Below are positions 5,661-59,680 of a stretch of DNA of 64,000 nt, in pieces. The translations under genes and the position numbers were made by a program. The stretch lies in assembly GCA_044892525.1 (NCBI GenBank), contig CM097886.1, positions 63,922,001 to 63,986,000 on the forward strand, read 5' to 3'. Below the pieces are notes generated by a model that was not told where the DNA came from, made no database searches, and saw only the letters and a list, made by a program, of their open reading frames with translations. Positions within the stretch are counted from its first letter, which is position 1; each line of letters starts with the position of its first letter. The stretch comes from Schmidtea polychroa. Taxonomy: Eukaryota.

Positions 5661-6015
5661 NNNNNNNNNNNNNNNNNNNNNNNNNNNNNNNNNNNNNNNN
5701 NNNNNNNNNNNNNNNNNNNNNNNNNNNNNNNNNNNNNNNNNNNNNNNNNNNNNNNNNNNNNNNNNNNNNNNNNNNNNNNNNNNNNNNNNNNNNNNNNNNN
5801 NNNNNNNNNNNNNNNNNNNNNNNNNNNNNNNNNNNNNNNNNNNNNNNNNNNNNNNNNNNNNNNNNNNNNNNNNNNNNNNNNNNNNNNNNNNNNNNNNNNN
5901 NNNNNNNNNNNACACGATTGCCAATTTTATTGTTCGCCTTTACAGGGCCACGTCGATCAGTTTTGAATAATAACATTTTGTCCATTTCAATGTCAAATAA
6001 TAAATTACCTACTTC

Positions 6016-6076
6016 TCGCGTCTGTGTGCGCACACCAACAAGAATCGGTCTAACCAGACCGCGCACACAGACGCGA
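6016..6076. repeat. 16-bp perfect inverted repeat with 29-nt spacer (copy 1)
   Basis: TCGCGTCTGTGTGCGC ... GCGCACACAGACGCGA; identical arms at 19853-19915. Confidence 0.9.
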
Positions 6077-6589
6077 ATATAAAAAGGCCAAACAACTGCC
6101 AGTCAGAGGCAATCCNNNNNNNNNNNNNNNNNNNNNNNNNNNNNNNNNNNNNNNNNNNNNNNNNNNNNNNNNNNNNNNNNNNNNNNNNNNNNNNNNNNNN
6201 NNNNNNNNNNNNNNNNNNNNNNNNNNNNNNNNNNNNNNNNNNNNNNNNNNNNNNNNNNNNNNNNNNNNNNNNNNNNNNNNNNNNNNNNNNNNNNNNNNNN
6301 NNNNNNNNNNNNNNNNNNNNNNNNNNNNNNNNNNNNNNNNNNNNNNNNNNNNNNNNNNNNNNNNNNNNNNNNNNNNNNNNNNNNNNNNNNNNNNNNNNNN
6401 NNNNNNNNNNNNNNNNNNNNNNNNNNNNNNNNNNNNNNNNNNNNNNNNNNNNNNNNNNNNNNNNNNNNNNNNNNNNNNNNNNNNNNNNNNNNNNNNNNNN
6501 NNNNNNNNNNNNNNNNNNNNNNNNNNNNNNNNNNNNNNNNNNNNNNNNNNNNNNNNNNNNNNNTATAAGATAACGCCAAACATTTTTTT

Positions 6590-6628
6590 CACGATTAATT
6601 TCGACAGTTTTCCTGTCATCATCAGGTG
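6590..6628 (-). ncRNA. Minimal type I hammerhead ribozyme in inverted pLTR
   Basis: Reverse complement of the motif at 7202-7240. Confidence 0.85.
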
Positions 6629-7186
6629 GGATATAATACTCATTAAATAAAGGATTTTAAACAAATTTAATTATATATAAAAATTTTTTATTTTATAAAA
6701 ATATTATTTTTTAAAAACTTTTACATTTAAAATTTAATTTAATAATTTAAAAATTTAAAAATTGGAGAGACTTCCCGTCATCTCTGTATTCGAGCTCGAG
6801 AACATTGTAGACCGAAGTCTTTGACCCATATTGGTGAGCACAATAAGGGCTGTAAGATTAAAATAGGTATGTCTGATTTTAAAATTTTATTAAAAAACTT
6901 CGATAATTATTGGGAACGTGTGATTTGTGAGGCGTTGTTGATAAAATCATTGAATCCGAAAATTAATGTGCAGAATGCTGTAAATACTTGTGTGTTGAGT
7001 GTTTTTAAATAAGCTTTTGTGTATTGTATGTATTGATTGTTGTGTTAAATTAAATAATTGATAAAAAAATTTAAAATTTTTAAATTATTAAATTAAATTT
7101 TAAATGTTAAAGTTTTTAAAAAATAATATTTTTATAAAATAAAAAATTTTTATATATAATTAAATTTGTTTAAAATCCTTTATTTA

Positions 7187-9730
7187 ATGAGTATTATATC
7201 CCACCTGATGATGACAGGAAAACTGTCGAAATTAATCGTGAAAAAAATGTTTGATTGGCGTTATCTTATAATTAAATCATTGCCATGTATGTTTAACTAT
7301 TTATTCAAAAATCATGTTTCTGCTGTTCCAGTATTCAAAAGATTATTGAAGACTTTTAATGCACTTAGAAGAAAAGAACTAGACATTTGTTTTCTTGAGA
7401 CTTGTCTAGAAGAAAAAATGATTCCTTCGTTCATTTTTAAAATGAAACTTAGTGATTGTCTCTCAAGTAAAGATGTGCAAATAATACATCAAAGAACGTT
7501 AAGAAGAATGTTGGAATCAGAGAAGATAAGGAGAATATCTTTGGATAAAAAACTATTAAATATTGGATGTACTTTAAATCAAATAACCAATGAGTTTTGT
7601 TTGCAGGTTTGTGTTGAATGGTGTATTAAAAATTCAATTTCTCAGTTAAAATCAAAAGAGAATGCTCATATCAATAAATTAAAAAATTTGAGAAAATTAT
7701 TTGGGATCTCTAAATTTAGTGTAGAGAATACATTAATAAACATGAGTAAAGTTGTTTTGTCTGAAGATGAGGAGCGTATTTTGAAATTTGGTCCCAATCA
7801 TTCCATTAAGAAAAGAATTGATGAAACAAAATTATGTGCGAAGATTGAATGTTTATACTTTCATATACTTAGATCGATGAAGGATATTAATACTAATTAT
7901 GTGAAGAGTGTGTTGAGTTCGAGTACGATGGAGTATATTGATAAAAATAAAAAGCAGAATATTAAAGATTTTACTGTATTAAAAAATTTAGCTAAAAAAG
8001 ACATCAATATATGCAAGTTTGACAAAGGAAATGGATTGGTAATTCTCGACCATGATGTATATGTAAATAAGCTTAATGATGTTTTGAACGCTCCCCAGTT
8101 TGTGAAAATAGAGATTTCTCGAAAAAATGGAATACATCCTCCTCTTAAGGATGAGAATTTGTTGAAAGAAATACTGAATAAATTAATTAAAAATAAGCAA
8201 ATTGATGAAGAGTTGTTTAAGTCCATTCGCCCAATGGGATCACAACCAGCAAAAATGTATGGGCTTCCAAAAATCCATAAAGATGACGTACCTATGAGAC
8301 CTGTTTTATCCATGATTGGCACTGCCCAGTATAAAATAGCCAAATTTTTGGATGGATTATTGAAACCATTGATACGATCAGAATTTGAATGTAAAGATAG
8401 TTTTGAATTTGTTTCCTGCATTGCACAATATGATAGACAAAGTATGGATGAAATTATGGTTTAGTTTGATGTTTGTAGTCTGTTTACTAATGTACCATTG
8501 GTTGAAACAATTGAATTATGTTGCTTGTTATGGAATGAAAATATTTCTGAACATCATATTTTGGATAGAACAGCATTTCGTGAACTTCTTGTATTTGCAA
8601 CTTCAAAAATCAATTTTCTTTTCAATAATGAATGGTATCAACAAATAGATGGAGTTGCTATGGGTTCTCCTTTAGCACCAACGATGGCTTCAATTTTTTT
8701 AACAAGCTTAGAAAAGAAAATTGCATCTTTCCAAGGTATGAAACCCACTGTTTATAAACGGTATGTGGATGATATTTTTCTTATATTTGAAAATCAGAGG
8801 CATGTTGACCCGTTTTTGCATTATATGAACAGTCTACATAAAAACATTGTATTCACATGTGAAACGGAGAAAAAATCATCGCTTGCTTTCTTGGATTTGT
8901 TAATTCAACGCAAAGAGAAACACTATGAGACAGAGATTTATAGAAAACCAACTGATACTGGTCTCTATACTTCTTCCGAAAGTTTTTGTGAATTCAAGTA
9001 TAAAAGAAATATGGTGAAGGGGTTGATTTGTCGTGCATGGTCTTTGTCATCTACTTTTAAAAATTCGGTAAAGAGTGTTGACGTGTTGGTTGAACTGTTG
9101 ATGAAGAATGGTTATTCAAAATCCTTTTTAGTAATTATGGTGAAAGAGACTGTTGACAAATTTATTAAAAATCCTAAGGATCCATGTTTGAGAAAATTTG
9201 GGTGTGATCTTGTTGAGATGTGTGAGTTTGATGAGTTAAATAAATTAAATAGTGTGAGCAAGGATGACGAGCCTAAATTTGTGTTAGTATTGCCGTACTC
9301 AGAAGGTTTTAAGGATTATAAAGTGAAGATAAGAAAGCAGTTAGGGAATTTAAACTATAGGATAGTGTCAACTTCATGGAAAGTACGCAATATGTTTATT
9401 AATAAGTCAAAGACTCCGGTTGAATTGTGTTCCGATCTCGTTTATCAGTTTACATGTAATGGGTGTAATGCCACATACATTGGAGAGACTTCCCGTCATC
9501 TCTGTATACGAGCTCGAGAACATTGTAGACCGAAGTCTTTGGCCCATATTGGTGAGCACAATAAGGGCTGTAAGATTAAAATAGGTATGTCTGATTTTAA
9601 AATTTTATTAAAAAACTTCGATAATTATTGGGAACGTGTGATTTGTGAGGCGTTGTTGATAAAATCATTGAATCCGAAAATTAATGTGCAGAATGCTGTA
9701 AATACTTGTGTGTTGAGTGTTTTTAAATAA
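7187..9730 (+). pseudogene. Penelope RT-GIY-YIG polyprotein with one in-frame TAG (8462-8464)
   Basis: GLPKIHK, MV*FDVCSLFTNVP, QIDGVAMGSPLAP, YKRYVDDIF and VYQFTCNGCNATYIGET. ORFs 7166-8464 and 8498-9730 are in the same frame. The second copy has TCG (Ser) at the stop position. Confidence 0.92.
7202..7240 (+). ncRNA. Minimal type I hammerhead ribozyme in 5' pLTR
   Basis: CAC-CTGATGA-T-GACAG-GAAAA-CTGTC-GAAA-TTAA-TC-GTG; predicted cleavage after 7237. Confidence 0.88.
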
Positions 9731-9902
9731 GCTTTTGTGTATTGTATGTATTGATTGTTGTGTTAAATTAAATAATTGATAAAAAAATTTAAATTAAATT
9801 TTAAATGTAAAAGTTTTTAAAAAATAATATTTTTATAAAATAAAAAATTTTTATATATAATTAAATTTGTTTAAAATCCTTTATTTAATGAGTATTATAT
9901 CC

Positions 9903-9941
9903 CACCTGATGATGACAGGAAAACTGTCGAAATTAATCGTG
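9903..9941 (+). ncRNA. Minimal type I hammerhead ribozyme in 3' pLTR
   Basis: Identical to 7202-7240. Confidence 0.88.
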
Positions 9942-10322
9942 AAAAAAATGTTTGATTGGCGTTATCTTATAATTAAATCATTGCCATGTATGTNNNNNNN
10001 NNNNNNNNNNNNNNNNNNNNNNNNNNNNNNNNNNNNNNNNNNNNNNNNNNNNNNNNNNNNNNNNNNNNNNNNNNNNNNNNNNNNNNNNNNNNNNNNNNNN
10101 NNNNNNNNNNNNNNNNNNNNNNNNNNNNNNNNNNNNNNNNNNNNNNNNNNNNNNNNNNNNNNNNNNNNNNNNNNNNNNNNNNNNNNNNNNNNNNNNNNNN
10201 NNNNNNNNNNNNNNNNNNNNNNNNNNNNNNNNNNNNATTTCATATATTTTTATATTTCCTTCATTTATTCGGAGTTTGTTTTTATACAAAAACATTATAA
10301 AAATTTTAATAATAAATATTAA

Positions 10323-12498: not shown

Positions 12499-14320
12499 AT
12501 GGATAATCTAAAAAATTTAAAAACGAAAACAAAGAGTGGAGCACTCAAAAGAAAATTGAAAGCAGAATTAAAAAAACTACCAAAACTTGATTTGTTTCTT
12601 AGAAAAAGTGCCGACAGTCAAGCAAGTACGTCTACTGTAAGAGTGGAAAACAACAATGAAATAATACTGAGGAGTCACGATGATGGGTTTGATGATGTCC
12701 AATTAGTGAACATTTGCGAAGAGAAAAATTGTAATGTATTAAAAGAAGTGCCAACTGATGATCACGATATTATTCAAACTGACACGGACAAATTAAATGT
12801 TTCAACTGATCTTGGTAAATATCTAAATCAAAATATTTCTGAAGAAACAAAGAGAATATTAATAAATCTTTCACCTCATTGACCAAAAGGGCCGTTTCCT
12901 AAAGATCCAGAACAAGAAAATATGTGTTTTAGAGAAACGTATTATTACTCTTGGGCAAAATATGGTACCAGTACCACGTTTGCGGCTCTGTTATTCCACT
13001 GTTTTAGACGCAGCATATTGTGGACCTTGTTGGCTTTTCTCGAATATCAAAGGCCAATGGCGTTCTGGTATAAGAGATTGGCGAAATTTATCATCACGCA
13101 TAAATGCGCATAGTATTTCTCAACAACACATTGGAGCATGTGCAGTGTACGAGATGTGGAGAAAAAATGAAACCATCGATAAAAATGCTGAAGCCTCTTT
13201 TTGGAAGATGGTTCTAGAATGTTTAATCCTTATAACGCTCATGTTAGCCAAAAATTCTTTATCATTTCGTGGACATCGAGAAGGATTTTCAGATGATTAT
13301 AATGAAAATTTTCTTTCACAGGCTCAATTGCTTGTCTATTATGATGATGTCATGAAGCAGATAATAGATATGCCATCTGGATCAATTAGATATGTAAGTC
13401 CAACAATTCAAAATGAACTAATACAATGTTTGGGAGAAAAACTTCTAAAAGAATTGATATTAAAGATTAATGTGGCGCCATTTTATACTCTAATGTTGGA
13501 CACAACACAAGACATCACAAAAATTGATCAACTAAGTATCATTATAAGACATGTTCACATTCTTCGGAGCACTAACCAAATACCAATAAATTTTGAAATC
13601 ATTGAAACCTTTCTAGGATTTTATGAATTTAAGGACCATTCCGCAGAAGGTATGAGTGATCAGGTAATGAAGATACTGATGGAAATGAATATTCCAATGG
13701 AAAAATGCTATGAACAGGGCTATGCTGGGGCTAGTGTCATGAGTGGTGTGTACAATGGTGTACAAACAAGGATTAAACGGATTCAACCAAATGCATTGCG
13801 CCAGTCACAATCTCAATTTAGTAATTAATGACTGTATTAGTGACTGCCACGCAGTTTCGTTATATTTTTCCACTCTTCAGAATGTATATGCGTTTTTTGG
13901 AAACAGTATAGAGGTGGGATCTTCTTTCTCAATTTAGTGGCGAGCCACAGATCACCTTAAAAAAACTTAATCAAACTCTTTGGTCAGGTAGAATATAGTC
14001 CCTAGCAGCTGTTAAAGTTCGTTTTGTTGACATTAAAAGCTTTGACTGAAATCAGTCTTAAATCCAAAAAAGGAAGAAAGAGATGAGGCAATTTGAATAC
14101 AGAAAAATATGGAGACATTTGATTTTGTTTTTATGAGTATATTTTTATATAAAGTCATGCGCGAAATTAATTATGCATCCAAAACTCTGCAGAAGAACGA
14201 CATTGACCTAGATGAAGCGTCTCTTGTGTTAAATCGTGTCAGTGAGAATATCCAAGAAAAATATCCAAAAATCGTATGAAAAACTGAAATTAGAAGCTGT
14301 AGAACAAGCCAAAAAGTGGA
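12499..14320 (+). pseudogene. hAT transposase pseudogene (ZMYM1-like/DUF4371 type)
   Basis: KSGALKRKLK N-terminus, TTF-like YCGPCWLF, LAKNSLSFRGHRE, MLDTTQDITKIDQLSIIIRHV, QGYAGASVMSG and HCASHNLNLVIND, with several frameshifts and stops. Confidence 0.88.
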
Positions 14321-15993: not shown

Positions 15994-16196
15994 CTAAGTN
16001 NNNNNNNNNNNNNNNNNNNNNNNNNNNNNNNNNNNNNNNNNNNNNNNNNNNNNNNNNNNNNNNNNNNNNNNNNNNNNNNNNNNNNNNNNNNNNNNNNNNN
16101 NNNNNNNNNNNNNNNNNNNNNNNNNNNNNNNNNNNNNNNNNNNNNNNNNNNNNNCAATGATTTAATTATAAGAAAACGCCAATCAAACCTTTTTTT

Positions 16197-16235
16197 CACG
16201 ATATATTTCGACAGTTTTCCTGTCATCATCAGGTA
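16197..16235 (-). ncRNA. Minimal type I hammerhead ribozyme (Penelope)
   Basis: Minus strand TAC-CTGATGA-T-GACAG-GAAAA-CTGTC-GAAA-TATA-TC-GTG. Confidence 0.85.
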
Positions 16236-16982
16236 GGATATATTAACTATATAAATAAAAATTTTTTAATAAAAACATTTCATTCTTTTTAAAATTATAA
16301 TTAAAATAATATATTATTTTTTAAATTTTAACATTTAGAATTTAATTTAATAATTTAATAATTTAATAATTTAAAAATTTTATTAATTTTTTAATTTAAC
16401 AACATCAATCGATATATACAATATACAAAAAAATCATTTAAAAACATTTAAAACACAAGTATTCACTGCATTCTGTACATTAATTTTCGGATTCAATGAC
16501 TTTATCAATAAAGCCTCAGAAATTACACGTTCCCAATAATTATCGAAATTTTTTTTAATAAAATTTTAAAATCAGACATACATATTTTAGTCTTACAGCC
16601 CTTATTATGCTCACTAATACTTTACAAAGTCTTCGGTCAATAATGCTCAAGAGCTCGAATACAGAGATGACGGGAAGTCTCTCTAATGTATGTGGCATTA
16701 CACCCATTACATGTAAACTGATAAACGAGATCGGGACAAAAGTCGATCGGGATTTTGTTTTTTTAAAAATAAATATATTACGTTGACACTATCCTATAGT
16801 TTAAATTTCCTAATGCTTTCTTATTTTCCCTTTATAATCCTTAAAACTTTCTGAGTACGCAATACAATCATCCTTGCTCACACTATTTAATTTATTTAAC
16901 TCACCAGACTTTTTAAAAAGAATGAAATATTTTTATTAAAAAAATTTGTTTAAAATCCTTAATTTTTATAATTATTATATCC

Positions 16983-17021
16983 TACCTGATGATGACAGGG
17001 AAACTGTCGAAATATATCGTG
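16983..17021 (+). ncRNA. Minimal type I hammerhead ribozyme (Penelope)
   Basis: TAC-CTGATGA-T-GACAG-GGAAA-CTGTC-GAAA-TATA-TC-GTG. Confidence 0.85.
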
Positions 17022-18825
17022 AAAAGAATGTTTGATTNNNNNNNNNNNNNNNNNNNNNNNNNNNNNNNNNNNNNNNNNNNNNNNNNNNNNNNNNNNNNNN
17101 NNNNNNNNNNNNNNNNNNNNNNNNNNNNNNNNNNNNNNNNNNNNNNNNNNNNNNNNNNNNNNNNNNNNNNNNNNNNNNNNNNNNNNNNNNNNNNNNNNNN
17201 NNNNNNNNNNNNNNNNNNNNNNNNNNNNNNNNNNNNNNNNNNNNNNNNNNNNNNNNNNNNNNNNNNNNNNNNNNNNNNNNNNNNNNNNNNNNNNNNNACT
17301 TTCAATTTCTTCATTAATTTTGGATTAATAAATAGATAAGTTTTGAAAATGAAACATAATATTTAATAATATGTCTTTCTGAAACTGTAATTTCGACGTT
17401 GTGCTTAAATATTCCAATTAAAATTAAAATTTCAATAAAAAAAGTTGATTTAAATAACATTTTATAAATTTTAAATTTAAAATCTTAATTTTTCAGACTT
17501 CAAATAAGTGGGTTTATTTATTAATTTAATTTCAATTGTGAATCAATTTATTGGATAAATGATCATTAAAAATTTAATCCATTTAATTTAAATAAAATCA
17601 ATTTTTATTTTCATGTTCAAAGAAGCTTAAAATAACGAAAGCAATATTTTTCAGATTCCATATGAAATCTCATTAATGAAATTTCATCGTTGGAATATTT
17701 TCGCGTGAAAGATCACGTGCATTCGCTAAGTGTAGTGTCAGAAAGTCTTAAAGATCATGTTGGATCAACCAGCAGCTTCGATAAGCATATTCCAATGCAC
17801 TTCATCGTGATAAATCAAGTGAAAAAAACTGCTTCTGATATTTTAGCTCAATCAGCAAAACTCTACAATTCACAAAGTTTTGCGAGCCTGGCATTGGTCA
17901 TAAATTACCTTGTCATGCGAATTAACTTTCTGGAAGTGATACTGGTTCATATCATAACTTTTGACAGTTTTCCATTCTGCATTTTTATTATATCAGCGGA
18001 GTTCCGCAAATGTTTTTCAATACGCTCGTTTGACGCTCCAAAATTAGATACTACTATTGGCTCCTTGATTGTGAAGTATTATAAAATGATTCACTAAAAT
18101 ATAAGCTTGAACTTTCACACTTAAAGGCTCTAGACAAGCGATTCAGAGTCACGAATGAGCTTCAGTCAAAGACCTTCGAAATTTGAATGTAAATGTACAT
18201 ATTAAGGATAAACTTTGGAATTTTGACTATCCCGAGGGCATCGATAAATGGAAAGCTGCATCAAACTTATTAAATAAAGTCTGAAGTTATTTGGATTGAA
18301 CTTGCAGCAAAATGTATATAACGACAGACGATGAAGCTGTCATGGTAAATGTTAGGAAATTGATTGCTTGTCTGTAACAACTATGTTTTACCTATTTGAC
18401 AGTTGTGAATTTCCTCTACAAAATGCCTGGATAGATCAAATGAAGAAGTTTATGATGATGAAGGCAAGAACAATGCAACTGATAGAGATTTCGAATTTTT
18501 TAACGAAGATGAGCTAGAACTATCATATAAACTGTATCCATAGATCAATAAAGTACGTAGGACTGTAAATCTGTTTCGTCGATCAACGACAAATACGAGC
18601 ATATTTCAAGACAGAAAATAGCTAAGAAAATAAAAGGTACTGCGTCAATTTCCNNNNNNNNNNNNNNNNNNNNNNNNNNNNNNNNNNNNNNNNNNNNNNN
18701 NNNNNNNNNNNNNNNNNNNNNNNNNNNNNNNNNNNNNNNNNNNNNNNNNNNNNNNNNNNNNNNNNNNNNNNNNNNNNNNNNNNNNNNNNNNNNNNNNNNN
18801 NNNNNAGAAATCAGTGGTGAAATTT

Positions 18826-18862
18826 GAAAATAAGTTCTTATAATATTATTATTAATATGACA
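18826..18862 (-). repeat. Terminus of foldback repeat family A
   Basis: AGAAATCAGTGGTGAAATTT...AAGTTCTTATAAT is the reverse complement of the start of the 19438 and 55539 copies. The rest lies in a gap. Confidence 0.75.
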
Positions 18863-18870
18863 TTATTATT

Positions 18871-19292
18871 AAAGCTCAAAACTACTCTACTAGATTCGAA
18901 CTGGGTATCACAAAGCTTGTACTGTTTATATTTTTCAAGTGTAAAACATCCGGGAAAAATTTTTTTACACCATTACTTTATAAGTTAAAAATTCTAAAGG
19001 TAATCGGATGCACCTGTAAACAGTTTCTGTGTATCGACCAATTTTTTAGTCTATAGAGGTGATTATGATTTTTCATACGCCATGTTTTACAAATTTACAG
19101 ATTTTTTGTGATCAAGCTAATAAACAAGTGATGTGTACCAGAGAAAGTATGCAATAAAGCTGAATCAGCAACTTTATATATAAACATATATCTTCGCGTC
19201 TCTTGCATAGTACTGATGAGAGCCAAAAGCTCGAAACTAGTCTACTATTGGAATTTGCACTGGGTATCACAAAGCTTATGCTGTTTATATCA
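18871..19292 (+). mobile_element. Retrozyme-like unit: ~65-bp direct repeats 355 bp apart, second one containing an intact HHR
   Basis: AAAGCTC(A/G)AAACTA...CTGGGTATCACAAAGCTT...CTGTTTATAT at 18871 and 19226, flanked by ATT-rich sequence. Confidence 0.6.
19207..19248 (+). ncRNA. Minimal type I hammerhead ribozyme, distinct from the Penelope pLTR HHR
   Basis: ATAGTA-CTGATGA-GAGC-CAAAA-GCTC-GAAA-CTAG-TC-TACTAT: perfect 6-bp stem I, 4-bp stem II, palindromic stem III, GUC site (cleavage after 19242). Confidence 0.9.
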
Positions 19293-19322
19293 TTAATATA
19301 TTATTATCATTATTAGTAATAC

Positions 19323-19323
<1 letters not shown>

Positions 19324-19405
<82 letters not shown>
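19324..19405. repeat. (ATT)n microsatellite
   Basis: Direct observation. Confidence 0.95.
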
Positions 19406-19407
<2 letters not shown>

Positions 19408-19437
19408 ATTACTAATATTATAACATTATTATTATTG

Positions 19438-19605
19438 TATTATAAGAACTTTTTTTTTAAAATTTCACCACTGATTTCTTTTCCATTGTATTCATTAAAA
19501 AGCTTGAAGACTATGAATCAGCAAATATATCGATGTTTTTGATATTCAAAAACATCGATATATTTACTGATTCATAGTCTTCAAGCTTTTTAATAAATTA
19601 TTATT
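19438..19605 (+). repeat. Foldback repeat family A, collapsed to a near-perfect palindrome
   Basis: ~50-bp arms AAAAAGCTTGAAGACTATGAATCAG...ATCGATGTTTTTGA / TCAAAAACATCGAT...CTTCAAGCTTTTT with a 3-nt loop. Confidence 0.85.
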
Positions 19606-19625
19606 ACTAATATTATTAAGTGATG

Positions 19626-19812
19626 ATTTCTTGGTAGCAGCATTTATTATTTAAAACAATAAAGTAATAATTTAAGCCTTTTGCTGCAAATAATGTACTT
19701 AATGAAAAGATTTTCGACTATAAGATAGTCCTTGACAAGGACTATCTTATATTCGAAAAATATTTCATTAAATACATTATTTGCAGCAAAAGGCTTATAT
19801 TATCACTTTATT
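19626..19812. repeat. Palindromic repeat family B
   Basis: Arms ~75 bp centred on GATAGTCCTTG-A-CAAGGACTATC. Confidence 0.85.
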
Positions 19813-19852
19813 ATTAATATTATTATTGTTTCAGCCGATTTTGGCGTTTTTA

Positions 19853-19915
19853 TCGCGTCTGTGTGCGCGTTATTATCAGACTGCTATTCGGAGTAGTATG
19901 CGCACACAGACGCGA
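19853..19915. repeat. 16-bp perfect inverted repeat with 31-nt spacer (copy 2)
   Basis: Same arms as 6016-6076, diverged spacer. Confidence 0.9.
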
Positions 19916-19987
19916 AGAGTTGGTTGATTTTGTTTTGTAGAAAGTTTTTTGCTAGAAGATTCTAGAGATTTTGTGATGTTGTTTAAA

Positions 19988-20725
19988 ATGGAGAAAAAAA
20001 TGGAAAGTGTCGTTGAAATTAATATTCAACCAGTGGCTCTATTCTCAATAACTGATGCATTTGAAAGAAGGTCTGACGTAAATTCTCGTGTCATTGGAAA
20101 TGAATTGATACATGATGATGATGTATATTCTTACAAATAATAAGTAAAAATTCAAAATATGTTCAATAACAAGTTTCGTTCATTTAATTTTCCCAAATCT
20201 GACAATTTCAAAATGAAAAACTCTTGTACATTTTCTAGTATTATCCAAGATTTAGAAAATCTTAAAAATTCAGAGCCGTTATGCAAGTATTCAATGAACA
20301 TCACACTACCTAATATTACAATGAAAGATAAGTCTACAAATTCACAAAGCAAAGATCAAAGTAATATTTCGATTGGAAAACAAAATGAAGATTATTTATG
20401 TGATATGAAATATGAACTATTGGACAAAACTAAACGTAATGGAGCTATGTTTGTCCCTATTGAAGTGCAAAGAATTGCTCATGAATCTGAAAGATACGCT
20501 TTGGATTTAATGAAAGAAGGATTACGAAATAAAGAAAGGCACGGGTATATGAAACCTGAATTGTCTCCGGTTATAAATGTAACTAGTGATATTTTTGAAA
20601 TGATAACAGTTGTGTTGGATTATGTTTCAAAAGTCGTCAATAAATACATTTTTGAAGTCTCTCTTCTGGGTATTTATGTTTGCTCAAATCAATTATTATT
20701 ATATTATTATTGTTATTATTATTAG
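19988..20725 (+). pseudogene. EIF3F: Rearranged eIF3 subunit F (MPN)-like sequence
   Basis: INIQPVALFSITDAFERRSDVNSRVIG resembles the eIF3f N-terminus. GAMFVPIEVQRIAHESERYALDLM...ITVVLDYVSKV resembles the later region. The MPN core between them and the C-terminus appear absent, and a stop occurs at 20140. Confidence 0.65.
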
Positions 20726-20899
20726 CTTGTTAATTATTATTGTTTTCAACTGAATTTAATTAATTGAATGAAAAAAGTGTGTAAATTTGTGCTTTTTAAA
20801 ATCCGGGTTTTGTAAATATTGGCCGATATATAATAATAATAACCACATATATGTGATGCTAAACTCATCAAAATCTGTTTTCAACAATTTAATAATTAC

Positions 20900-21361
20900 C
20901 TCTGGTATAATATTTGGTTTTGAAGATGATGTTATAATAGGCTTTTCAGGTACAATATTTGGTAATTTTGAAACCATATCTTCATCATCTGTATTTATAT
21001 TTGATTCTGTTGAAGATTGGGTCACAACTTTGACAAGGGAAGAAGTAGAAACATTTTTAGGACCTGAAGTTGATGACTTCTTCTCTGGTGTATTTACAGG
21101 TAACTGTTTGAAAGGTTTAGTGTCAGGTTTATTTTCTTCTGAATCGCCACTACCTTCCCACGAAGGATATTGTGAAATTTTAGGTTGTTCGGGAATTTTG
21201 TTGTTATTATTATTATTACTATTTTGAATATTATTATCTTCTAAAATTGATTTTCCAGTCTGTGGAGGTGGAAGAGTTGGCTTGACTTCTTCTGTCTCAA
21301 TCTTTTTAGTCTGTTCAACTGGACTAATAGGGAAATTTTCAAAATCACCACTACCTTCAAT
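20900..21361 (-). CDS. Internal exon of Ser-Gly proteoglycan-like protein (inferred to splice to 15993)
   Basis: TTTAG acceptor, 154 open codons (IEGSGD...WEGSGD...KPNIIPE), then GTAATT donor, phase 0. Confidence 0.7.
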
Positions 21362-22179
21362 CTAAACGATTTTTAAAGTAAATTAATATCTTTAGGTTTT
21401 ATGTGCTTAAGGAAATTTTAACAGTAACAAATAGTTTAGAAGCATGACTTACTAATTGGAATAAATAACTTAAATGATGACCGGAAATACTTAAAAATTA
21501 AAATGACACTTTTTAAAATTATATCTTTATAATTTATTGTATCTTTACAACACATAATGCCCGAATTATTTGTCAAAGATGAATTAAAATAATTTCACGA
21601 ATTGAATCACCAACAATACAAAAAAATTATTAATTTATTAATGCTGAACACATTTTTTATATCCATAGATGACACTTCAATTTATATGAAAACTTTACAA
21701 CTACTTTCAGAAGGTGTTTTAACACGTTTCGATTTTCCAATTTATGTCCCAATTTCTCAAGACTTCTAAAAAAATTAAATATTATGATTTCACAAGACTG
21801 GTCATTTGATGAACCAAAAATCTATTTTAGAATGAACGATTTTTTAACATTTATGCTCTGAGAATTTACTGAAAAATCTTACCGGTAAAATTAATACCCT
21901 TTGGATTTTTACTAAACCACGACAGAAAGTCAATTGCTTTTATGCATTTCATAATTTGTTGGTTCTGAAAATGCGAGAGATTGATAAATAAAGCTTAACA
22001 TTTGAAGAAACTATGGAAAACTAATTTCAAATTCTATACTAGCTTCAGTACCTGGTTTTGCTCCGGATAGATTCAAACTCATTCTTTTTGTATTATAATT
22101 GTCATGGGTTGTTTGTCAATTATATATTCATACGTTGTATATATATGTATATGCATGTTTGTGCGTGTATATTAAGAAA

Positions 22180-23646: not shown

Positions 23647-24788
23647 TTGGGTTTTACATTACTGTTAAACAGCAACAGTAAAACAGCTGTTTTTTGTCTT
23701 AATCGGAAAACATTAAACAGCTGTTTTTTCGAAGCTGTTTATACTGTTTTTTAACGATCCTTTTTCAATTTTTTTAAAAAGAATTTTTAATATTATAATA
23801 TAACTTACAAAAGTCAATATTTAATTGATATTGTTGATAAATATTTGTTTGATTATTTATATACTAACAAACTTCTAAAAACATAATTTTATATTTCACC
23901 CATGTCTTCAGTTTGGGATTATGCTATAAAACGAAAAAATGTGTTAAAAAAGGTGCTTGAAGGTCAATGCAAGCGATGTAATAAAGTTATAACTTGTTCT
24001 GGCAATTCTACAACAACTTTAAAAAATCAAGAAACTTTCGATGATTAATAGTGAAATAAGTCAAGATCTGCATGATAACTTAAAGCAACGAATCGATGAA
24101 AGAATAAATAAAGATGTTATGAATCTTTTGAAAAGTCTCAAAGATTCATCAGTTGTTCCATCAGAAACAACATTAACATTTGCTGGACGTTTAGCTTCAC
24201 GCATATTTGAATTTGATGATGGCGATGATATACGTGGTTCTACCCAAGAAGAATTTGAAAACACCAATCTTTCGCTAAAAGAAGAACTTAATATGCTTTT
24301 ATATATGGATCAAACCCCGAAAGTACTTGAAGTAGATTTTAAATGGCTTAAGTCAGAATTCACTTTGTATAAGAATACTGGACAACGAACGGAAAATCTT
24401 CAAAAACTTTACAATGCACTTCTTAGCATCAAACCAACATCGACTGACATTGAGCGTGTATTCTCAATTTGCACAAATTTTTGCACTAAAATTAGATCAC
24501 GCTTATCAGATGATGCTCTTAAAGCTTTGGTTTTCTTGAAATTTTACTATAAAAAATAAATAAGTTTTCTGATGTTATATGAATTAAGTTGTTATAAAAG
24601 ATAATAAATATTTTCCAAGATATTAATAAATTGAAAAAAAATAAATATATACATTTTCAGTATTTTTTAAATATTAAAATTATGGGAAAATTGAAAAAAC
24701 AGTAAAAACAGCTAATATCAGCTGTTTTTTCGAAAATAAAAAACAGTAACAGCTGTTTTTTGAAAACCGCTGTTTTTGTAAAACCCTA
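23647..24788 (+). mobile_element. Internally deleted hAT (Ac-like) element
   Basis: TIR T(T/A)GGGTTTTACA, TSD TACCCAA(G/C), repeated AACAGC subterminal motifs, BED-finger start at 23902, hAT dimerisation domain (KPTSTDIERVFS...RSRLSD) in ORF 24041-24559. Confidence 0.88.
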
Positions 24789-28584: not shown

Positions 28585-29455
28585 ATGGAGGTCGATAAAA
28601 CGCACATACGAGATTGCATTTTATTCATGTTCAACATGAATAAAAAAGCATCAGAAGCAAAAGAAGAAATTTGCCAAGATATTGTCAGGCTCATAACTTT
28701 CAAGGACCGGTAATCGAAGTTCAAGAGGACTGATTTTAGTTTAGAGGCCAATGTGGGATCAGGACCCCCGCAAGAAACCCAAGATGAACAGCTTCAGGCG
28801 CTATTGGATGAAGATGATCCACAATTAAAGCGTGGCGTTGTCAGAAGACCTAATGTCAATCATTAAAGATAGTGCAGAGAAGATTTCAGGCTTTGTATAC
28901 GTTTCTAATGCATGTAGATGGGTTCTGCATTAGCTTTCACAAATAAACAAGAATGATATAATTGTCTTATCTGACACGTATAATGACTGGAGATGAGACG
29001 TGAGTGTAACCCTGAGAGAAAAATGTTGTAGACAGACCCAGACATGCCTTTGACATACGTCCCAAGGCGCCAAATCCGTGGAAAAAAAGATATTTTATAT
29101 ATGTGTGCTGGAACAAGAAAGAAATCGTGTACTGTGAGTTATTGAAGTCAAATGAAATTGTTACTGCAATAAGGTATTGTTATCAGCTGAATGATAAAAT
29201 AGAGTTAAGACCGTATTCAGACCATACATCACCAAATATCATACTCTTGCATGATAAAGCAAGACCGCATGTTGCATCTACAACGAAAAGTATAATATTA
29301 GAGCTTGGATTGGGAATTCTTCTACACCAACAATATTCACCGAAATTGGCCTCATCAGATTACCATATCTTGAGGTCTCTCCAACGCACTTTCTGACACA
29401 AAATTTACCAAACTTGAAAAAGTGAAAAGTGGACGCTGATTACTTCATTGAATAA
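28585..29455 (+). pseudogene. mariner (DD34D) transposase remnant
   Basis: MEVDKTHIRDCILFMFNMNKKASEA (mariner HTH), RIMTGDET, LLHDKARPH and YSPKLASSDYH; many stops and frameshifts. Confidence 0.88.
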
Positions 29456-31270: not shown

Positions 31271-33458
31271 CAATCTGTACAATATCAGTTTTTTGAAATT
31301 TAAAATTGTTGCATATACTTTGTTACATATATTAACATGTTATTTCATGGATAAATGTATTACTCGCCTTTTCCAGTGGATTCGTTAATAAGTTTTTACG
31401 CTGTCCGGATTTTGATGTCGAACCTGTTACATGTCTACTTTAAAATAAAATTTTTATTAAATTATTTATAATCTTTTTATTTTTCGAATCGAAAAATAAA
31501 TAATTTTAAACAATTTTAAAATCCAAATTTAATAATTGCCATTCAATTCCTATGAAATTGAAAAAGAATAAAAAATTATTTTACCATTAGTTAATAGTAA
31601 AAAGAATAGCAATAGAAGGAGTGAAATTATTACAAGTCAGTACTATAAACTAGTTATCAAAATAATGCTTAATAAATATCAGAGACTAGTCATAGGAAAA
31701 TTTTATTTTTATGAGGACAGAAATTATTCAAAATATAATTAAAAACATTTTTACTTTTGTTTTAATTCTTCTTGACATTGGAGAGAGAAAATCCGTAAGT
31801 TTAGTGCTTTGGGAACCGACAGGATTTTTCTTAGGTACTCCGGACTTCAAATTATCATTTAATTTTTTTTCCCAAAATGGAGACTCATCACCTAATTTGG
31901 TTTGCCAAAACATAAATTCTTTCGCAACCTGTCTTTTTCTTCGAGCTGTACTTCCAGCATTTTGACATTTAGCTTTGATCTGAATATTAAAATTATGTTT
32001 AATACAGTTATAAATTTAACAATAAATTATTTTTGTAATATAATTGGTTAATTTTTCGATTAATTCAAAATTTTATTTTTCGAACTAATTAATTAATTAA
32101 ATAAGAAAATCTGATGGAATTCATATCATAAATTTTAACCCTCTATAACAGTGATCGGCAAATTTTGTATATTATTTAACAAATTATCTAATTAGTTATA
32201 TTTATTTAAGTGTTGGATCGTTTTGAAAGAAATTTCGTATATTAATTGTCCAACAATTAATAAAATTTAATTCGAAACGCATTTATTTTAATATTTTATT
32301 ATTTAGTAAAAATTTTAAGTTTTTAAACAATTTTTTTAATCTAAAATGATCAGCAGATGAATTGACGAATTAATTTCATGAATTTTAAAAGAAAAGCAAC
32401 ACATCAACAATAAATGAAAGGTAGTGTATTAGTGAAAGTAAACACCAAACAAATATCTCAGGATTTTTTAAACCTCCATCTTCTTGTGGTAGTAGAAATT
32501 ACAATTGTCTTATTTTGTCTAAATGAAGTGCTTTATATTTTTTTTGTAAAAATTAAATAATTTTTTAATTTAATTTAAATGAAATACACACATGACAATG
32601 GCTGTGCTGAAATATCGTGTACCTTATATATTGTTTTGATCTATAGACTCACAAACATTTTATTGAATTATATTATTTAAATTATTGAAAAACAAATCAA
32701 TGGTGAAACCAAAAGAAACAAAATTTTTGTAAATTTTTAAATTTTAAGGTCTGTTTTTACCATTCATTAAAAACCTTAAAAACTTGGTCCCGATAAAAAA
32801 TCAAAAATAAATATTATATTTTTAATGGTTTGGTATCTCCAAAAATCCTGAATTTTATGTCACAAAAAGCGTAAATTGGTGAGCTATCAACTCAATACTT
32901 TCCGGTGGGTTGGATTAAGTAATTTAATCTAGATTTAGTATATTATTCTTAGTATATAATTAATTGTCAACATAATCACTTATCGATCATTTTCAATTAA
33001 AGCCTAAAAAGATAGAATCACTGAAAAAAGAGAAAATTCACAGATCACACGAAACAATTGAAAATGATCAACGATAAATTAATTCTTAGAGTAAAAGGAC
33101 TTATTAAAAATGTTTGCGTTAAAATTATTTTCCTTATAAAAATATTTAATAAAGATTTTTCGCGAAAAACAAGTAATGAATGAAATTCTATTAAAGAATG
33201 AATTATAAAAACTTAAAAATTCATAAAAATTATCATTGTAAAAATGGCTGTGATTGACAGCTGGCCACTTTAGGCTTTTAGTGACATTTAGCATTTAAAA
33301 TTTTTTCAATGATATTGAACCACTTGTACCATTTGTTGACCCTTTTAGACGTTTTATTAAGATTACACGAATGAAACTTTATTTTTAGGATTTTTAATGA
33401 AAAAGTTTTTAGGCGGTTGAGTGAGATAAAATTAAAAGATTTTAAATTTAATTCATTT

Positions 33459-33600
33459 ATTATAAGAACTTCTTTCAATTTTCAACTTTGATTTCTTTTA
33501 AATTGACATTGTATTTATTAAAAAATTGACTATGAATCAGTAAAGATATCGGGTTTTTTTTATATTCACGAATTTTCGTCACAGCCTTTTCAAGTGATTT
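33459..33600 (+). repeat. Foldback repeat family A, left arm only
   Basis: TATAAGAACT...TTGACTATGAATCAGTAAAGATATC...ATATTCACGAATTTTC. Confidence 0.8.
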
Positions 33601-39048: not shown

Positions 39049-39056
39049 ATTTTCTG

Positions 39057-43149: not shown

Positions 43150-43810
43150 ATGATAATTAGACAACTTATTGTTATTCATTTGTTGTTGAAATTTCGGCAG
43201 AAACTTTTGAGCCAAACCTGTATATCTTAAAATACATGAAAGCTGTTCTTAGTGAGAAATGTCAGTAGTGAATTCTAATATTACTGAATAATACTCTGAA
43301 CTTAGAACTCTCTAAGAGATTAATTGAATACTTTTTATTTCACTTTGAATTCTTTTACTTAGATGCAGGATATTATTTTCTTTATTTGTTCCTTCACCAT
43401 ATATACGTTCTTTAAGCACCGGATCGTATTTTAGAATAACTTGATTTGTTCATGATCAATTAAAAATGAATTTTATATAAAAAAATTGAATGTAGACAAA
43501 AAAAAGATATCTTACCTGCTCTTTAATTGTTGGATAAATATTCTGTATATTCATAATGGCAGTGGATATTTGCACATTCATCTTATGATTAACTGCTGGG
43601 AAATTTAACTGATTATCTAATTTATTGGCAAGTTCAAATAGAGCGTCTAAAAGAAATCTGAAATCAATATTAAAAAAGCAAGCTAAATAAAAGCGTCGAT
43701 AGTAATCTATATACAGCATCTTCCGGATATAGTTAAGTTGGATATTATAAAAAATTGGATATAGTAAAACTAGTGTGTGGCAATAGTCCTTGTACTGTAC
43801 TATATGTTCC
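43150..43810 (-). pseudogene. Highly degraded hAT (DUF4371-type) transposase remnant
   Basis: LKYDPVLKERI and ILEFTTDISH*EQLSCILRY resemble LA.YDPVL.E and ILDETTDISHKEQLS.ILRY. Confidence 0.5.
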
Positions 43811-48000: not shown

Positions 48001-48349
48001 TAATGAATAAAAATAATAGGCGAAATCCAATATTTAAACAAATATAATAAAGCTTACTTAAATATTTAATCAAAATCTTGTCGAGTTTCTTCAACTCAGC
48101 CAACTTAAATGAACCAAAACAATTATCCATGAGAGTTTTACATGCCATAGGACAGGATTTGACTGTCAATCCATTACATAACATACAATGAAACTGAGTA
48201 TTAAATTGTTCTACACAATTGGCAGTAGGAGTTATCTGAACATAGGAGTTATATGAATTGAATAAAATAAATAAAATAAAATTCTTTTAATATTTATTAT
48301 AAAATTTTATTTTGTAAAGGGCTGATCATCTTTTATATATTTCACATTA

Positions 48350-48353
48350 TTAA

Positions 48354-48428: not shown

Positions 48429-48429
<1 letters not shown>

Positions 48430-57723: not shown

Positions 57724-59680
57724 ATTCTCGGAAAAATGGAATACAGCCTCCTCTTAAAGATGAGAATTTGTTAAAAGAGATACTGAATAAATTAATTAAA
57801 AATAAGCAAATTGATGAAGAGTTGTTTAAATCTATTCGCCCAATGGAGTCACAACAAGCAAAAATTTGTGGGCTTCGAAAAATCCATAAAGATGGCGTGC
57901 CTATGAGACCTGTATTATCCATGATTCGCACTGCCCAGTATAAAATAGTCAAATTTTTGGATGGATTATTGAAACCATTAATACCATCTGAATTTGAATG
58001 TAAAGATAGTTTTGAATTTGTTTCCTGCATTGCACAATATGATAGACAAAGTTTGGATGAAATTATGGTTTCGTTTGATGTTTGTAGTCTGTTTACTAAT
58101 GTACCATTAATTGAAACAATTGAATAATGTTGCTTGTTATGGAATGAAAACATTTCTGAACATCATATTTTGGATGGAAGAGCATTTCGTGAAGTTCTTG
58201 TATTTGCAACTTCAAAAATCAATTTTCTTTTCAATGATGAATGGTATCAACAAATTGATTGAGTTGCTATGGGTTCTTCTTTAGCACCAACAATGGCTTC
58301 AATTTTTTTAGCAAGCTTAGAAAAGAAAATTGCATCTTTTCAATGTATGAAACCCACTGTTTATAAACGGTATGTGGATGATATTTTTCTTATATTTGAA
58401 AATCAGAGGTATGTTGACCCGTTTTTGCATTATATGAATAGTCTACATAAAAACATTTATTCACATGTGAAACGGAGAAAAAATCATCACTTGCTTTCTG
58501 GGATCTGTTAATACAACGCAAAGAGAAACGCTATGAGACAGAGATTTATAGAAAACCAACTGATATTGGTCTCTATACTTCATCCGAAAGTTTTTGTGAA
58601 TTCAAGTATAAAAGAAATATGGTGAAGGGTTTGATTTATCTTTCACGGTTTTTGTCTTCTACTTTTGAAAATTCAGTGAAAAGTGTTGACAAAATGGTTG
58701 AAATGTTAATGAAGAACGGTTAATTACAATCCTTTTTAGTAATTATGGTAAAAGAGACTGTTGACAAATTTATTAAAAATCCTAAGGATCCATGTTTGAG
58801 AAATTCTGGGTGTGATCTTGTTGAGGTGTGTGAGTTTGATAAGTTAAAATCTGGGTGTGATTTTGTTGAGGTGTGTGAGTTTGATGAGTCAAATAAATTA
58901 AATAGTGTGAGCAAGAATGATGAGCCTAAATTTGTGTTAGTATTGCCGTACTCAGAAGGTTTTAAGGATTATAAAGTGAAGATAAGAAAGCAGTTAGGGA
59001 TTTTAAATTATAGGATAGTGTCAACTTCATGGAAAGTACGCAATATGCCTATTAACAAGTCAAAAACTCCGGTCGAATTGTGTTCCGATCTCGTTTATCA
59101 GTTTACATGTAATGGGTGTAATGTCACATACATTGGAGAGACTTCCCGTCATATCTGTATTCGAGCTCGAGAACATTGTAGACCGAAAACTTTGACCCAT
59201 ATTAGTGAGCACAATAAGGGATGTAAGATTAAAATAGATATGTCTGATTTTAAAATTTTATTAAAAAATTTCGATAATTATTGGGAATGTGTGATTTGTG
59301 AGGCGTTGTTGATGAAGTCATTGAATCCAAAAATTAATGTGCAGAATGCAGTGAATAAATGTATTTTAAATGTTTTTAAATAATTTTTTTCTTGTATATT
59401 GTATGTATTGATTGTTGTGTTAAATTAAATAATTAATAAATTTTTATAAATTCTTAAATTATATTTTGAATGTTTAAAATTTTTAAAAATATATTAATTT
59501 AATTATAATTTTTAAAAATAATTAAATGTTTTTATTAAATAAAAAAGTTTTTATATAATTAATAAATGTTTAAAATCCTTAATTTACATAGTTATTATAT
59601 CCCACCTGGTGATGACAGGAAAATTGTCGAAATATATCGTAAAAAGAATGTTTGATTGGTGTTTTCTTATAATTAAGTAA
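57724..59680 (+). mobile_element. 5'-truncated, decayed Penelope copy with 3' pLTR
   Basis: Colinear with ~8115-9975; stops and frameshifts; in-frame 45-bp tandem duplication at 58806-58895. Confidence 0.93.
59603..59641 (+). ncRNA. Mutated Penelope hammerhead (core CTGGTGA), probably inactive
   Basis: CAC-CTGGTGA-T-GACAG-GAAAA-TTGTC-GAAA-TATA-TC-GTA. Confidence 0.7.

What the first reader, a model, noticed from the sequence alone, without database searches (positions are those of the whole stretch)
18871..19292. Stand-alone hammerhead ribozyme in a ~355-bp direct-repeat unit (retrozyme-like), unrelated to the local Penelope pLTR
Seen: 19207-19248 has a complete HHR core, perfect 6-bp stem I, GAGC/GCTC stem II, palindromic ACTAGT stem III and a GUC site. 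A decayed copy of its 3' half and flank lies 355 bp upstream. No ORF is evident, and the unit sits in ATT-rich sequence. Known: metazoan retrozymes are small non-coding tandem-HHR elements that yield circular RNAs and are thought to be mobilised by Penelope-like elements. Inference: this is a second, non-autonomous ribozyme retroelement family, possibly using the Penelope RT/EN found in this window.
Basis: partly seen in the sequence, partly recalled or inferred. Interest (0 to 1): 0.75.

Follow-up and report, generated by a model that had tools for sequence, protein, structure and literature searches.

The report
Lone hammerhead ribozyme retroelement copy
A genuine self-cleaving-RNA (hammerhead) motif sits in a short, ORF-less, slightly-more-than-one-unit repeat inserted into an ATT microsatellite of an animal genome; it is best read as a stranded copy of an already known kind of small ribozyme retroelement, so it is real but ordinary.

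Summary
At 19207-19248(+) there is a complete type-I hammerhead: 6-bp helix I, CTGATGA, 4-bp helix II, GAAA, palindromic ACTAGT helix III and a GTC site with the cut after 19242. It is the only strict match in the window, and such a match arose in 2 of 300 simulated windows. A 61-65-nt copy of its 3' half and tail lies 355-359 bp upstream (83% identity). The element therefore spans 18871-19290, about 1.17 units of a ~359-bp unit. It has no ORF above 54 aa. It lies in ATT-rich DNA between two inverted copies of a MITE-like repeat. It shares no sequence with the local Penelope family beyond the ribozyme core, and its ribozyme is of a different subtype. The best reading is a 5'-truncated, more-than-unit copy of a metazoan non-LTR retrozyme-type element. 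With one intact ribozyme it is inert at this locus. Not shown: any other copy, any tandem array, any RNA, or any link to the local Penelope enzyme. The unit is not unusually self-paired (z about -0.1). A truncated 3' end of another Penelope family in partial tandem cannot be excluded. This is a new member of a known kind, of modest interest.

The parts
18871..19290 (+). Whole ribozyme-bearing element, about 1.17 units: a 5'-truncated upstream unit followed by a full unit
   Evidence: Bounds come from the direct repeat and from the switch to ATT-rich and MITE-like flank on both sides. Each bound is uncertain by about 2 nt because the flanks are low-complexity.
18871..18931 (+). Partial upstream unit: the last 61 bp of the unit. 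It keeps only the 3' part of the ribozyme plus the tail.
   Evidence: 83% identical to 19226-19290 with one 4-nt indel. It lacks the 5' half of the ribozyme. It differs at 3 positions in the ribozyme part it retains, including conserved ones, so it cannot act as a ribozyme or as a dimer partner.
18932..19290 (+). One full unit of 359 bp, 32% G+C, non-coding
   Evidence: Defined by the repeat register. It holds no ORF above 54 aa and shows no similarity to 120 Penelope-type proteins at E<1e-3. Circular fold z is -0.07 on the plus strand and -0.08 on the minus strand.
19207..19248 (+). Type-I hammerhead ribozyme; predicted cleavage after C at 19242
   Evidence: Read directly from the sequence. 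It is the only descriptor hit in the window and such a hit arose in 2 of 300 simulations. Rfam HH9 scores 21.6 bits, E 0.0095, below gathering. The monomer fold with a 1-bp helix III is -1.0 kcal/mol. The double-hammerhead fold with a 6-bp intermolecular helix III is -18.8 kcal/mol.
19291..19439 (.). ATT-rich microsatellite abutting the 3' end of the element; the presumed target tract
   Evidence: TRF reports period 3 and 50 copies at 19288-19436. The same (ATT)n precedes other copies of the neighbouring MITE-like repeat, for example 48346-48428.
18806..18843 (-). Inner end of an inverted copy of a MITE-like or foldback repeat. It continues into the N run 18654-18805, which was not filled.
   Evidence: 88% identical to 55529-55577 and 85% to 33458-33496 on the opposite strand. 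It forms an inverted repeat with 19452-19479.
19440..19598 (+). Copy of the same MITE-like or foldback repeat, with an internal palindrome at 19490-19598
   Evidence: Matches 55539-55754, 48428-48672, 33427-33568 and 50113-50169. Its 53-nt arms are 96% complementary.
6564..9993 (+). Context only: local Penelope-like element copy A. It has an inverted 5' piece at 6564-6763 and a pseudo-LTR at 6761-7292 that equals 9479-9993. Its RT plus GIY-YIG reading frame is interrupted once by an in-frame stop, with no frameshift seen. Its own, different hammerheads start at 7205 and 9906, with one on the minus strand at 6587-6625.
   Evidence: It is bounded on the right by an N run. No sequence relation to the finding.
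16155..17037 (-). Context only: Penelope copy B, a 3' fragment with a short inverted piece and hammerhead motifs on both strands. Its coding remnant carries about 3 frame changes and 4 stops.
   Evidence: Both sides abut N runs.
57726..59677 (+). Context only: Penelope copy C, 5'-truncated. Its coding region carries about 2 frame changes and 3 stops, and its hammerhead core is altered.

Best explanation
18871-19290 is a single, dead-on-arrival insertion of a short non-coding hammerhead retroelement of the metazoan non-LTR retrozyme type. These are also described as non-autonomous derivatives of Penelope-like elements.

Shown here:
- It carries a canonical type-I hammerhead.
- The unit is about 359 bp and has no ORF.
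- The copy is longer than one unit. Its 5' end falls inside a ribozyme, and its 3' end lies 48 nt past the cleavage site.
- It is inserted in an ATT microsatellite.

Inferred for the family, from the published model (PMC7229834, PMC4209133):
1. Source loci with two or more units are transcribed.
2. Neighbouring ribozymes pair through the palindromic ACUAGU to build a 6-bp helix III (a double hammerhead) and cut after GUC.
3. The ~359-nt monomers, with 5'-OH and cyclic-phosphate ends, are closed into circles by a host RNA ligase.
4. A Penelope-type reverse transcriptase/GIY-YIG nuclease copies the multimeric or circular RNA for more than one turn at a nick in AT-rich repeat DNA. It stops early, leaving a 5'-truncated copy of more than one unit such as this one.

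At this locus only one ribozyme is intact and helix III is too short to fold alone. The copy is therefore expected to cleave poorly, to give no circle and to be inert.
For: Ribozyme:
- The core and all three helices are as required. The motif is improbable by chance (2 of 300 simulations). The best Rfam family is a type-I hammerhead.
- The layout of helix I 6 bp, helix II 4 bp and a 1-2-bp helix III with a palindromic loop is the 'canonical metazoan type-I' layout. That type is said to work as a dimer in tandem repeats (PMC4209133).
- The double-hammerhead fold is -18.8 kcal/mol, against -1.0 for the monomeric ribozyme fold.

Unit:
- Its length of 355-359 bp lies within the 170-400 nt reported for animal retrozymes, and its low G+C also fits (PMC7229834).
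- There is no ORF and no similarity to Penelope proteins in 17298-21500.
- The direct repeat gives more than one unit.

Insertion style:
- 5' truncation, partial tandems and insertion into microsatellites are the published style of Penelope-type integration (PMC8557442).
- Local Penelope copy A shows the same plan: a 3'-terminal fragment followed by a full unit. Its ribozyme cleavage site lies about 38-41 nt from the 3' end, compared with 48 nt here.
- Solo monomers are common in retrozyme families (bioRxiv 10.64898/2026.07.22.740005).
- Three Penelope copies in the same 64 kb show that such enzymes exist, or existed, in this genome.
Against: - Only one locus was seen, and there is no second copy in the window.
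- No eukaryotic genome collection was available, and pattern scans of the three collections gave only chance 19-31-nt matches or nothing. A multi-copy family and tandem arrays are therefore assumed, not shown.
- The locus fails the working criterion of two consecutive complete ribozymes, and TRF sees no ~355-bp period.
- The unit is not more self-paired than shuffles: linear z is -1.4 and -1.9, circular z is about -0.1. Published retrozyme circles are described as highly self-paired.
- The Rfam score is far below gathering.
- There is no 3'-end similarity to the local Penelope family, so no partner is identified.
- A target-site duplication cannot be read in the low-complexity flanks.
Confidence: 0.55

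Rival explanations
1. It is the 3' end of an autonomous Penelope-like element of a second family, present as two 5'-truncated pieces in the partial tandem typical of these elements (the last 61 bp, then the last 359 bp). On this reading the '355-bp unit' is set by a truncation point and is not a true period.
For: Penelope insertions are heavily 5'-truncated and arranged as a partial copy followed by another copy (PMC8557442). Local copy A shows this plan. Hammerheads lie near the 3' ends of these elements, as here. Most genomic PLE-type hammerheads occur as single motifs ascribed to truncated elements (PMC4209133). One locus cannot tell a unit junction from a truncation junction.
Against: The ribozyme lacks the features reported for metazoan PLE hammerheads, namely an unpaired base before helix II, a long helix II and a short helix I. 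It has the canonical type instead (PMC4209133, PMC7229834). There is no trace of an endonuclease C-terminus in the 359 bp. In the local family the last 359 bp would include about 110 nt of coding sequence. In the published scheme the upstream partial copy precedes a full-length copy, which implies that 18932 is a true 5' end.
Confidence: 0.2
2. It is the eroded remnant of a DNA-level tandem (satellite-like) array carrying hammerheads. The array was cut down by deletion or by the neighbouring repeat insertions, and this is not a discrete retrotransposed copy.
For: Animal hammerheads were first known from short tandem DNA repeats (PMC4209133, PMC7229834). The two overlapping segments differ by 17%, which suits an old array. 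The region is crowded with foldback and MITE-like repeats and microsatellite.
Against: Both ends are sharp against ATT-rich flank. The neighbouring MITE-like copies end at their usual terminus rather than cutting into unit sequence. No other unit fragment lies within 64 kb.
Confidence: 0.1
3. It is a chance hammerhead-like motif next to a chance or unrelated short duplication.
For: The genome is very A+T-rich and the Rfam score is below gathering. The fold z-scores are unremarkable.
Against: The strict descriptor is expected 0.007 times per window. The repeat has BLAST E about 1e-13. The duplicated segment begins inside the ribozyme, which ties the two observations together. The genome demonstrably carries hammerhead-bearing retroelements.
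Confidence: 0.03

Closest known systems
Metazoan non-LTR retrozymes (Cervera & de la Pena 2020, PMC7229834; Li et al. 2026 preprint, 10.64898/2026.07.22.740005)
   Same: It shares the type-I hammerhead, a unit of a few hundred bp (170-400 nt reported; about 350-390 bp in mussel), the lack of an ORF, LTR, PBS or PPT, low G+C, and co-residence with Penelope-like elements. Solo monomers are a recognised state.
   Different: This locus has only 1.17 units and one intact ribozyme. No array, no RNA and no family were seen. The unit is not highly self-paired. The sequence is unrelated to anything retrievable with the tools on hand.
Canonical metazoan type-I hammerheads with a short palindromic helix III that act as double hammerheads (newt, Schistosoma and axolotl type; PMC4209133, PMC7229834; Rfam clan CL00010)
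   Same: Helix I is 6 bp and helix II is 4 bp with an A-rich loop. Helix III is 1-2 bp with a palindromic centre, and the site is GUC. The Rfam HH9 alignment covers the core and all three helices.
   Different: It scores 21.6 bits against a gathering score of 52. The loop 1 / loop 2 contacts cannot be assigned, and the outer part of helix I is poorly defined.
Hammerheads in pseudo-LTRs of Penelope-like elements, including the family in this window (PMC4209133, PMC8557442)
   Same: Both are type-I with a small palindromic helix III (ATTAAT in the local element, ACTAGT here). Both lie within about 85 nt of the element's 3' end and share the plan of a partial copy followed by a full copy.
   Different: There is no adjoining RT/EN reading frame and no sequence similarity outside the core. 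It has no unpaired base before helix II. Helix II is 4 bp rather than 5, and helix I is 6 bp rather than 3.

Membership tests
Hammerhead ribozyme, type I | Invariant core: CUGANGA, GAAA, an A15.1-U16.1 pair and a non-G base at position 17 | tested here: met
   Read directly at 19213-19242. Passed the descriptor scan.
Hammerhead ribozyme, type I | Three helices around the core, with helix I open and G10.1-C11.1 closing helix II | tested here: met
   Helix I is 6 bp and helix II is 4 bp starting G-C. Helix III is 2 bp with a 2-nt centre, so it is stable only between two copies: -18.8 kcal/mol for the dimer against -1.0 for the monomer.
Hammerhead ribozyme, type I | Reaches the curated Rfam gathering score of a hammerhead family | tested here: not met
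   HH9 scores 21.6 bits against 52, E 0.0095 on 695 nt. There is no hit at gathering. Minimal helix III variants commonly fall short, so this lowers formal membership but not the structural reading.
Hammerhead ribozyme, type I | Self-cleavage at the predicted site | not testable with these tools
   No RNA data were available.
Metazoan non-LTR retrozyme | Tandem repeat with at least two consecutive units, each with a complete hammerhead | tested here: not met
   The locus has 1.17 units and one complete ribozyme. TRF finds no ~355-bp period. The locus could still be a solo copy of such a family.
Metazoan non-LTR retrozyme | Unit of about 170-400 bp, low G+C, no ORF, no LTR, PBS or PPT | tested here: met
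   The unit is 355-359 bp at 32% G+C. The longest ORF is 54 aa. There are no terminal repeats other than the unit overlap.
Metazoan non-LTR retrozyme | Monomer RNA predicted to be highly self-paired | tested here: not met
   The circular MFE is -62.7 kcal/mol with 60% of bases paired, z -0.07 against 200 dinucleotide shuffles. Linear z is -1.4.
Metazoan non-LTR retrozyme | Multi-copy family in the genome, expressed as linear and circular RNA | not testable with these tools
   There is no second copy in 64 kb. The collections on hand hold no matching eukaryotic DNA.
Pseudo-LTR of an autonomous Penelope-like element | Adjoins or overlaps an RT plus GIY-YIG reading frame | tested here: not met
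   tblastn of 120 Penelope-type proteins finds nothing at E<1e-3 in 17298-21500. A copy truncated to its last 359 bp could still escape this test.
Pseudo-LTR of an autonomous Penelope-like element | Sequence similarity to the Penelope family present in the window | tested here: not met
   nothing beyond the ribozyme core.

The most novel reading that the evidence does not exclude
The 1.17-unit structure is the footprint of reverse transcription running more than once around a ~359-nt circular ribozyme RNA. The enzyme would be a Penelope-type one that shares no 3'-end sequence with its passenger. Recognition would then rest on the ribozyme fold or on nothing specific. The canonical-hammerhead elements would form a lineage that parasitises Penelope elements rather than deriving from the resident family.
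Probability: 0.2. Interest if true: 0.5.

Novelty: new member of a known kind. Interest (0 to 1): 0.3.

Why it matters
It adds one well-delimited example of a canonical type-I hammerhead element beside Penelope elements that carry a different hammerhead subtype. That bears on whether animal retrozymes derive from the pseudo-LTRs of resident Penelope families, as the 2026 preprint argues for Xenopus, or are separate passengers. The 5' end inside a ribozyme and the length of more than one unit fit the multimeric or circular template model but do not prove it. For annotation, the site should be labelled as a ribozyme-bearing non-coding repeat copy, not as part of the local Penelope family. None of this would surprise a specialist.

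Tried and rejected
1. Exact-pattern scans with a 19-mer conserved in both copies gave 3 metagenome, 2 prokaryote-genome and 1 viral contig. All share only 19-31 nt with the unit, so they are chance matches. Two ribozyme patterns found nothing in viral contigs.
2. A full-text search for four sequence strings from the ribozyme and tail found no paper.
3. I tried to name the organism.
   - An exact look-up of the 288-aa hAT-related ORF was not on record.
   - The word search with the Penelope RT/EN piece gave 344 unnamed relatives. The best full-length hits were 55-59% identical, plus one 89% fragment from ENA assembly ERZ2272692.
   - The species stays unknown. A glypican-like exon and the Penelope elements point to an animal.
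4. ARAGORN found no tRNA-like part. A B-box-like string in the partial copy is not kept in the full copy, so a SINE-type polymerase III promoter was dropped.
5. The Rfam mir-2067 hit at 18962-19022(-) scores 26 bits against 70 and was taken as chance.
6. The inverted repeat around the element first looked like terminal inverted repeats of a larger element. It was rejected because the arms are the inner ends of two outward-running copies of a repeat found four more times in the window.
7. Steps not run:
   - The costly protein searches with pseudo-ORFs of the unit, because the odds were very low for the cost.
   - Any consensus of the unit or of the Penelope copies.
   - Any joined reading of the interrupted Penelope frame; its pieces were searched apart.
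   - Any filling of the N run 18654-18805.

Full report
**1. The observation**

The stretch 19207-19248(+) reads as a complete type-I hammerhead.
- Helix I is ATAGTA paired with TACTAT, 6 bp.
- The core is CTGATGA.
- Helix II is GAGC/GCTC with loop CAAAA.
- GAAA follows, then the palindrome ACTAGT, which supplies the A15.1-U16.1 and C-G pairs of helix III.
- The GTC triplet ends at 19242, where cleavage is predicted.

A loose search for CTGATGA...GAAA gave 10 overlapping matches at 6 sites, against 1.3 expected. Five sites belong to the local Penelope copies and one is the finding. A stricter structural descriptor that demands pairing in all three helices returned the finding alone on either strand. 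In 300 simulated windows of the same dinucleotide make-up, the descriptor at the finding's strength appeared in 2.

Rfam finds nothing in the window at gathering scores. With permissive settings on 695 nt it gives Hammerhead_HH9 at 21.6 bits, E 0.0095 (gathering 52). The alignment covers the core and all three helices and has a gap where the model has a helix III loop.

The upstream decayed copy is real. 18871-18931 matches 19226-19290 at 83% over 65 columns, E about 1e-13, at an offset of 355-359 bp because of one 4-nt indel.

**2. Anatomy**

The repeat register defines an element of 18871-19290. It consists of the last 61 bp of a unit followed by one full unit of 359 bp (18932-19290), about 1.17 units in all.
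- The 5' end falls inside a ribozyme. The partial copy keeps only the 3' part of it and differs there at 3 positions, some conserved, so it is not functional.
- The 3' end lies 48 nt beyond the cleavage site.
- No ORF above 54 aa overlaps the element.
- 120 Penelope-type proteins gathered find nothing at E<1e-3 anywhere in 17298-21500.
- The unit has 32% G+C, against about 26% for the surroundings.
- TRF reports no period near 355 bp.

**3. Surroundings**

The 3' flank is an (ATT)n tract. It is followed from 19440 by a copy of a MITE-like or foldback repeat, which recurs at 33427-33568, 48328-48672, 50113-50169 and 55529-55754 and is itself usually preceded by (ATT)n.

The 5' flank is 27 nt of ATT-rich sequence. 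Before that comes the inner end of an inverted copy of the same repeat (18806-18843), which runs into the N stretch 18654-18805.

The inverted repeat around the element is therefore two outward-running neighbours, not the termini of a larger element. The element sits in a microsatellite between them. A target duplication cannot be read in such sequence.

About 700 bp downstream on the same strand there may be the first exon of an eIF3f-like gene, on weak evidence.

**4. Relation to the local Penelope family**

The window holds three copies of one Penelope-like family.
- Copy A (6564-9993) has a pseudo-LTR and an inverted 5' piece. Its RT plus GIY-YIG frame is interrupted once by an in-frame stop.
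- Copy B (16155-17037) is a 3' fragment.
- Copy C (57726-59677) is 5'-truncated and has several frame changes and stops.

Their hammerhead has an extra unpaired base before a 5-bp helix II, only 3 bp of helix I, and an ATTAAT helix III. These are traits reported for metazoan Penelope hammerheads (PMC4209133). It gets no Rfam hammerhead hit at E<=10.

The finding's unit shares nothing with this family beyond the ribozyme core.
- BLAST at word size 7 is blank.
- The 3' tails align worse than shuffles do.
- The unit body gives z 0.7 and 2.2.

The plan is nonetheless the same. Copy A is a 3'-terminal fragment followed by a full unit, and the cleavage site lies about 38-41 nt from the 3' end seen in copy C.

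**5. How it most likely works**

The ribozyme layout is what PMC4209133 calls the canonical metazoan type-I hammerhead. Its short helix III blocks cleavage by a single copy, while two copies in a tandem transcript form an active double hammerhead.

The energy terms agree with this.
- The monomeric ribozyme fold with a 1-bp helix III is -1.0 kcal/mol.
- The double hammerhead with a 6-bp intermolecular ACUAGU helix is -18.8 kcal/mol.
- That is within 4 kcal/mol of the unconstrained dimer optimum.

[quoted passage not shown] The circles are probably closed by a tRNA ligase.

PMC8557442 describes Penelope insertions as heavily 5'-truncated, arranged in partial tandems and biased toward microsatellites.

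The 2026 preprint 10.64898/2026.07.22.740005 argues that animal retrozymes are non-autonomous Penelope derivatives. It counts solo monomers as common, non-competent offspring.

Taken together, the locus is best read as such an offspring. A cDNA was copied for a little more than one turn from a multimeric or circular ~359-nt RNA, primed in an ATT tract, and ended early inside the next ribozyme.

Only the anatomy is shown. Transcription, cleavage, circle formation and the enzyme are inferred. With one intact ribozyme, this copy should be inert.

**6. What weakens it**

- There is one locus only. No other copy exists in 64 kb, and no eukaryotic genome collection was on hand.
- The working criterion of two consecutive complete ribozymes is not met.
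- The unit is no more self-paired than shuffles: linear z is -1.4 and -1.9, circular z is about -0.1.
- No partner element is identified.
- Penelope elements themselves insert as a partial copy followed by another copy. One locus therefore cannot exclude the 3' end of a second, autonomous Penelope family present as two truncated pieces. The canonical ribozyme subtype and the absence of any endonuclease remnant argue against that reading but do not settle it.

**7. Verdict**

This is a new member of a known kind and is of modest interest.

**8. Conduct**

The two pieces of the interrupted Penelope frame were searched apart. N stretches were left alone.
- One slip: checkpoint note 1 lists the coordinates of the two uninterrupted ORF pieces of Penelope copy A, which brackets an interruption. 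This report gives outer bounds and counts only.
- The organism could not be named. Nothing suggested human sequence.

Noticed in passing
window 19440-19598, 18806-18843, 33427-33568, 48328-48672, 50113-50169, 55529-55754: A MITE-like or foldback repeat family of about 160-220 bp with an internal palindrome (53-nt arms, 96% complementary at 19490-19598). It is usually preceded by an (ATT)n tract. Two inverted copies bracket the ribozyme element.
   Followed up: partly
window 19655-19815 and 1751-1863: A second foldback repeat: 80-nt arms, 90% complementary, 1 nt apart, with a related copy near the start of the window (88-92% identity).
   Followed up: no
window 19853-19915; related 6007-6092(-): A perfect 16-nt G+C-rich inverted repeat separated by 31 nt, in otherwise A+T-rich DNA. 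It lies in a segment that recurs (76%) next to Penelope copy A. Its nature is unknown.
   Followed up: no
window 19988-20098(+): A possible first exon of an eIF3 subunit F-like MPN-domain gene about 700 bp downstream of the ribozyme on the same strand. Pfam JAB gives E 0.021 and PDB eIF3f chains give E about 0.035, both below threshold.
   Followed up: partly
window 43456-43812(-): An ORF with a glypican-like stretch (Pfam E 1e-4, 21.7 bits against a cut-off of 26.4). It is the clearest hint that the host is an animal.
   Followed up: no
window 35989-40163(-): A Ty3/Gypsy-type LTR retroelement with two long open frames. One is 1019 aa with protease, RT, RNase H and integrase domains. The other is 368 aa with a zinc knuckle. 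LTRs were not sought and the element was not fetched or compared further.
   Followed up: no
window 12962-13828(+), 24041-24559(+), 29103-29396(+): DNA-transposon remnants: a DUF4371 piece and a hAT dimerisation-domain piece, plus a mariner-type transposase fragment.
   Followed up: no
window 6587-6625(-), 7205-7243, 9906-9944, 16194-16232(-), 16986-17024; altered copy near 59607-59638: The local Penelope family carries its own hammerhead variant, with an extra base before helix II and an ATTAAT or ATATAT helix III. It occurs in direct and inverted pseudo-LTR copies, and in copy C the core is altered.
   Followed up: partly
window, 12 N runs of 138-469 nt (for example 18654-18805, 9994-10236, 16000-16154, 17038-17297): Four N runs abut ends of Penelope pseudo-LTRs, and one abuts the MITE-like arm next to the finding. 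They limit what can be said about element ends.
   Followed up: no
L007 (ENA assembly ERZ2272692, contig of 1110 bp): The only close relative (89% protein identity over half the query) of the local Penelope RT/EN in the 5.8-billion-protein collection. This suggests that DNA of a related animal is present in that sample.
   Followed up: no
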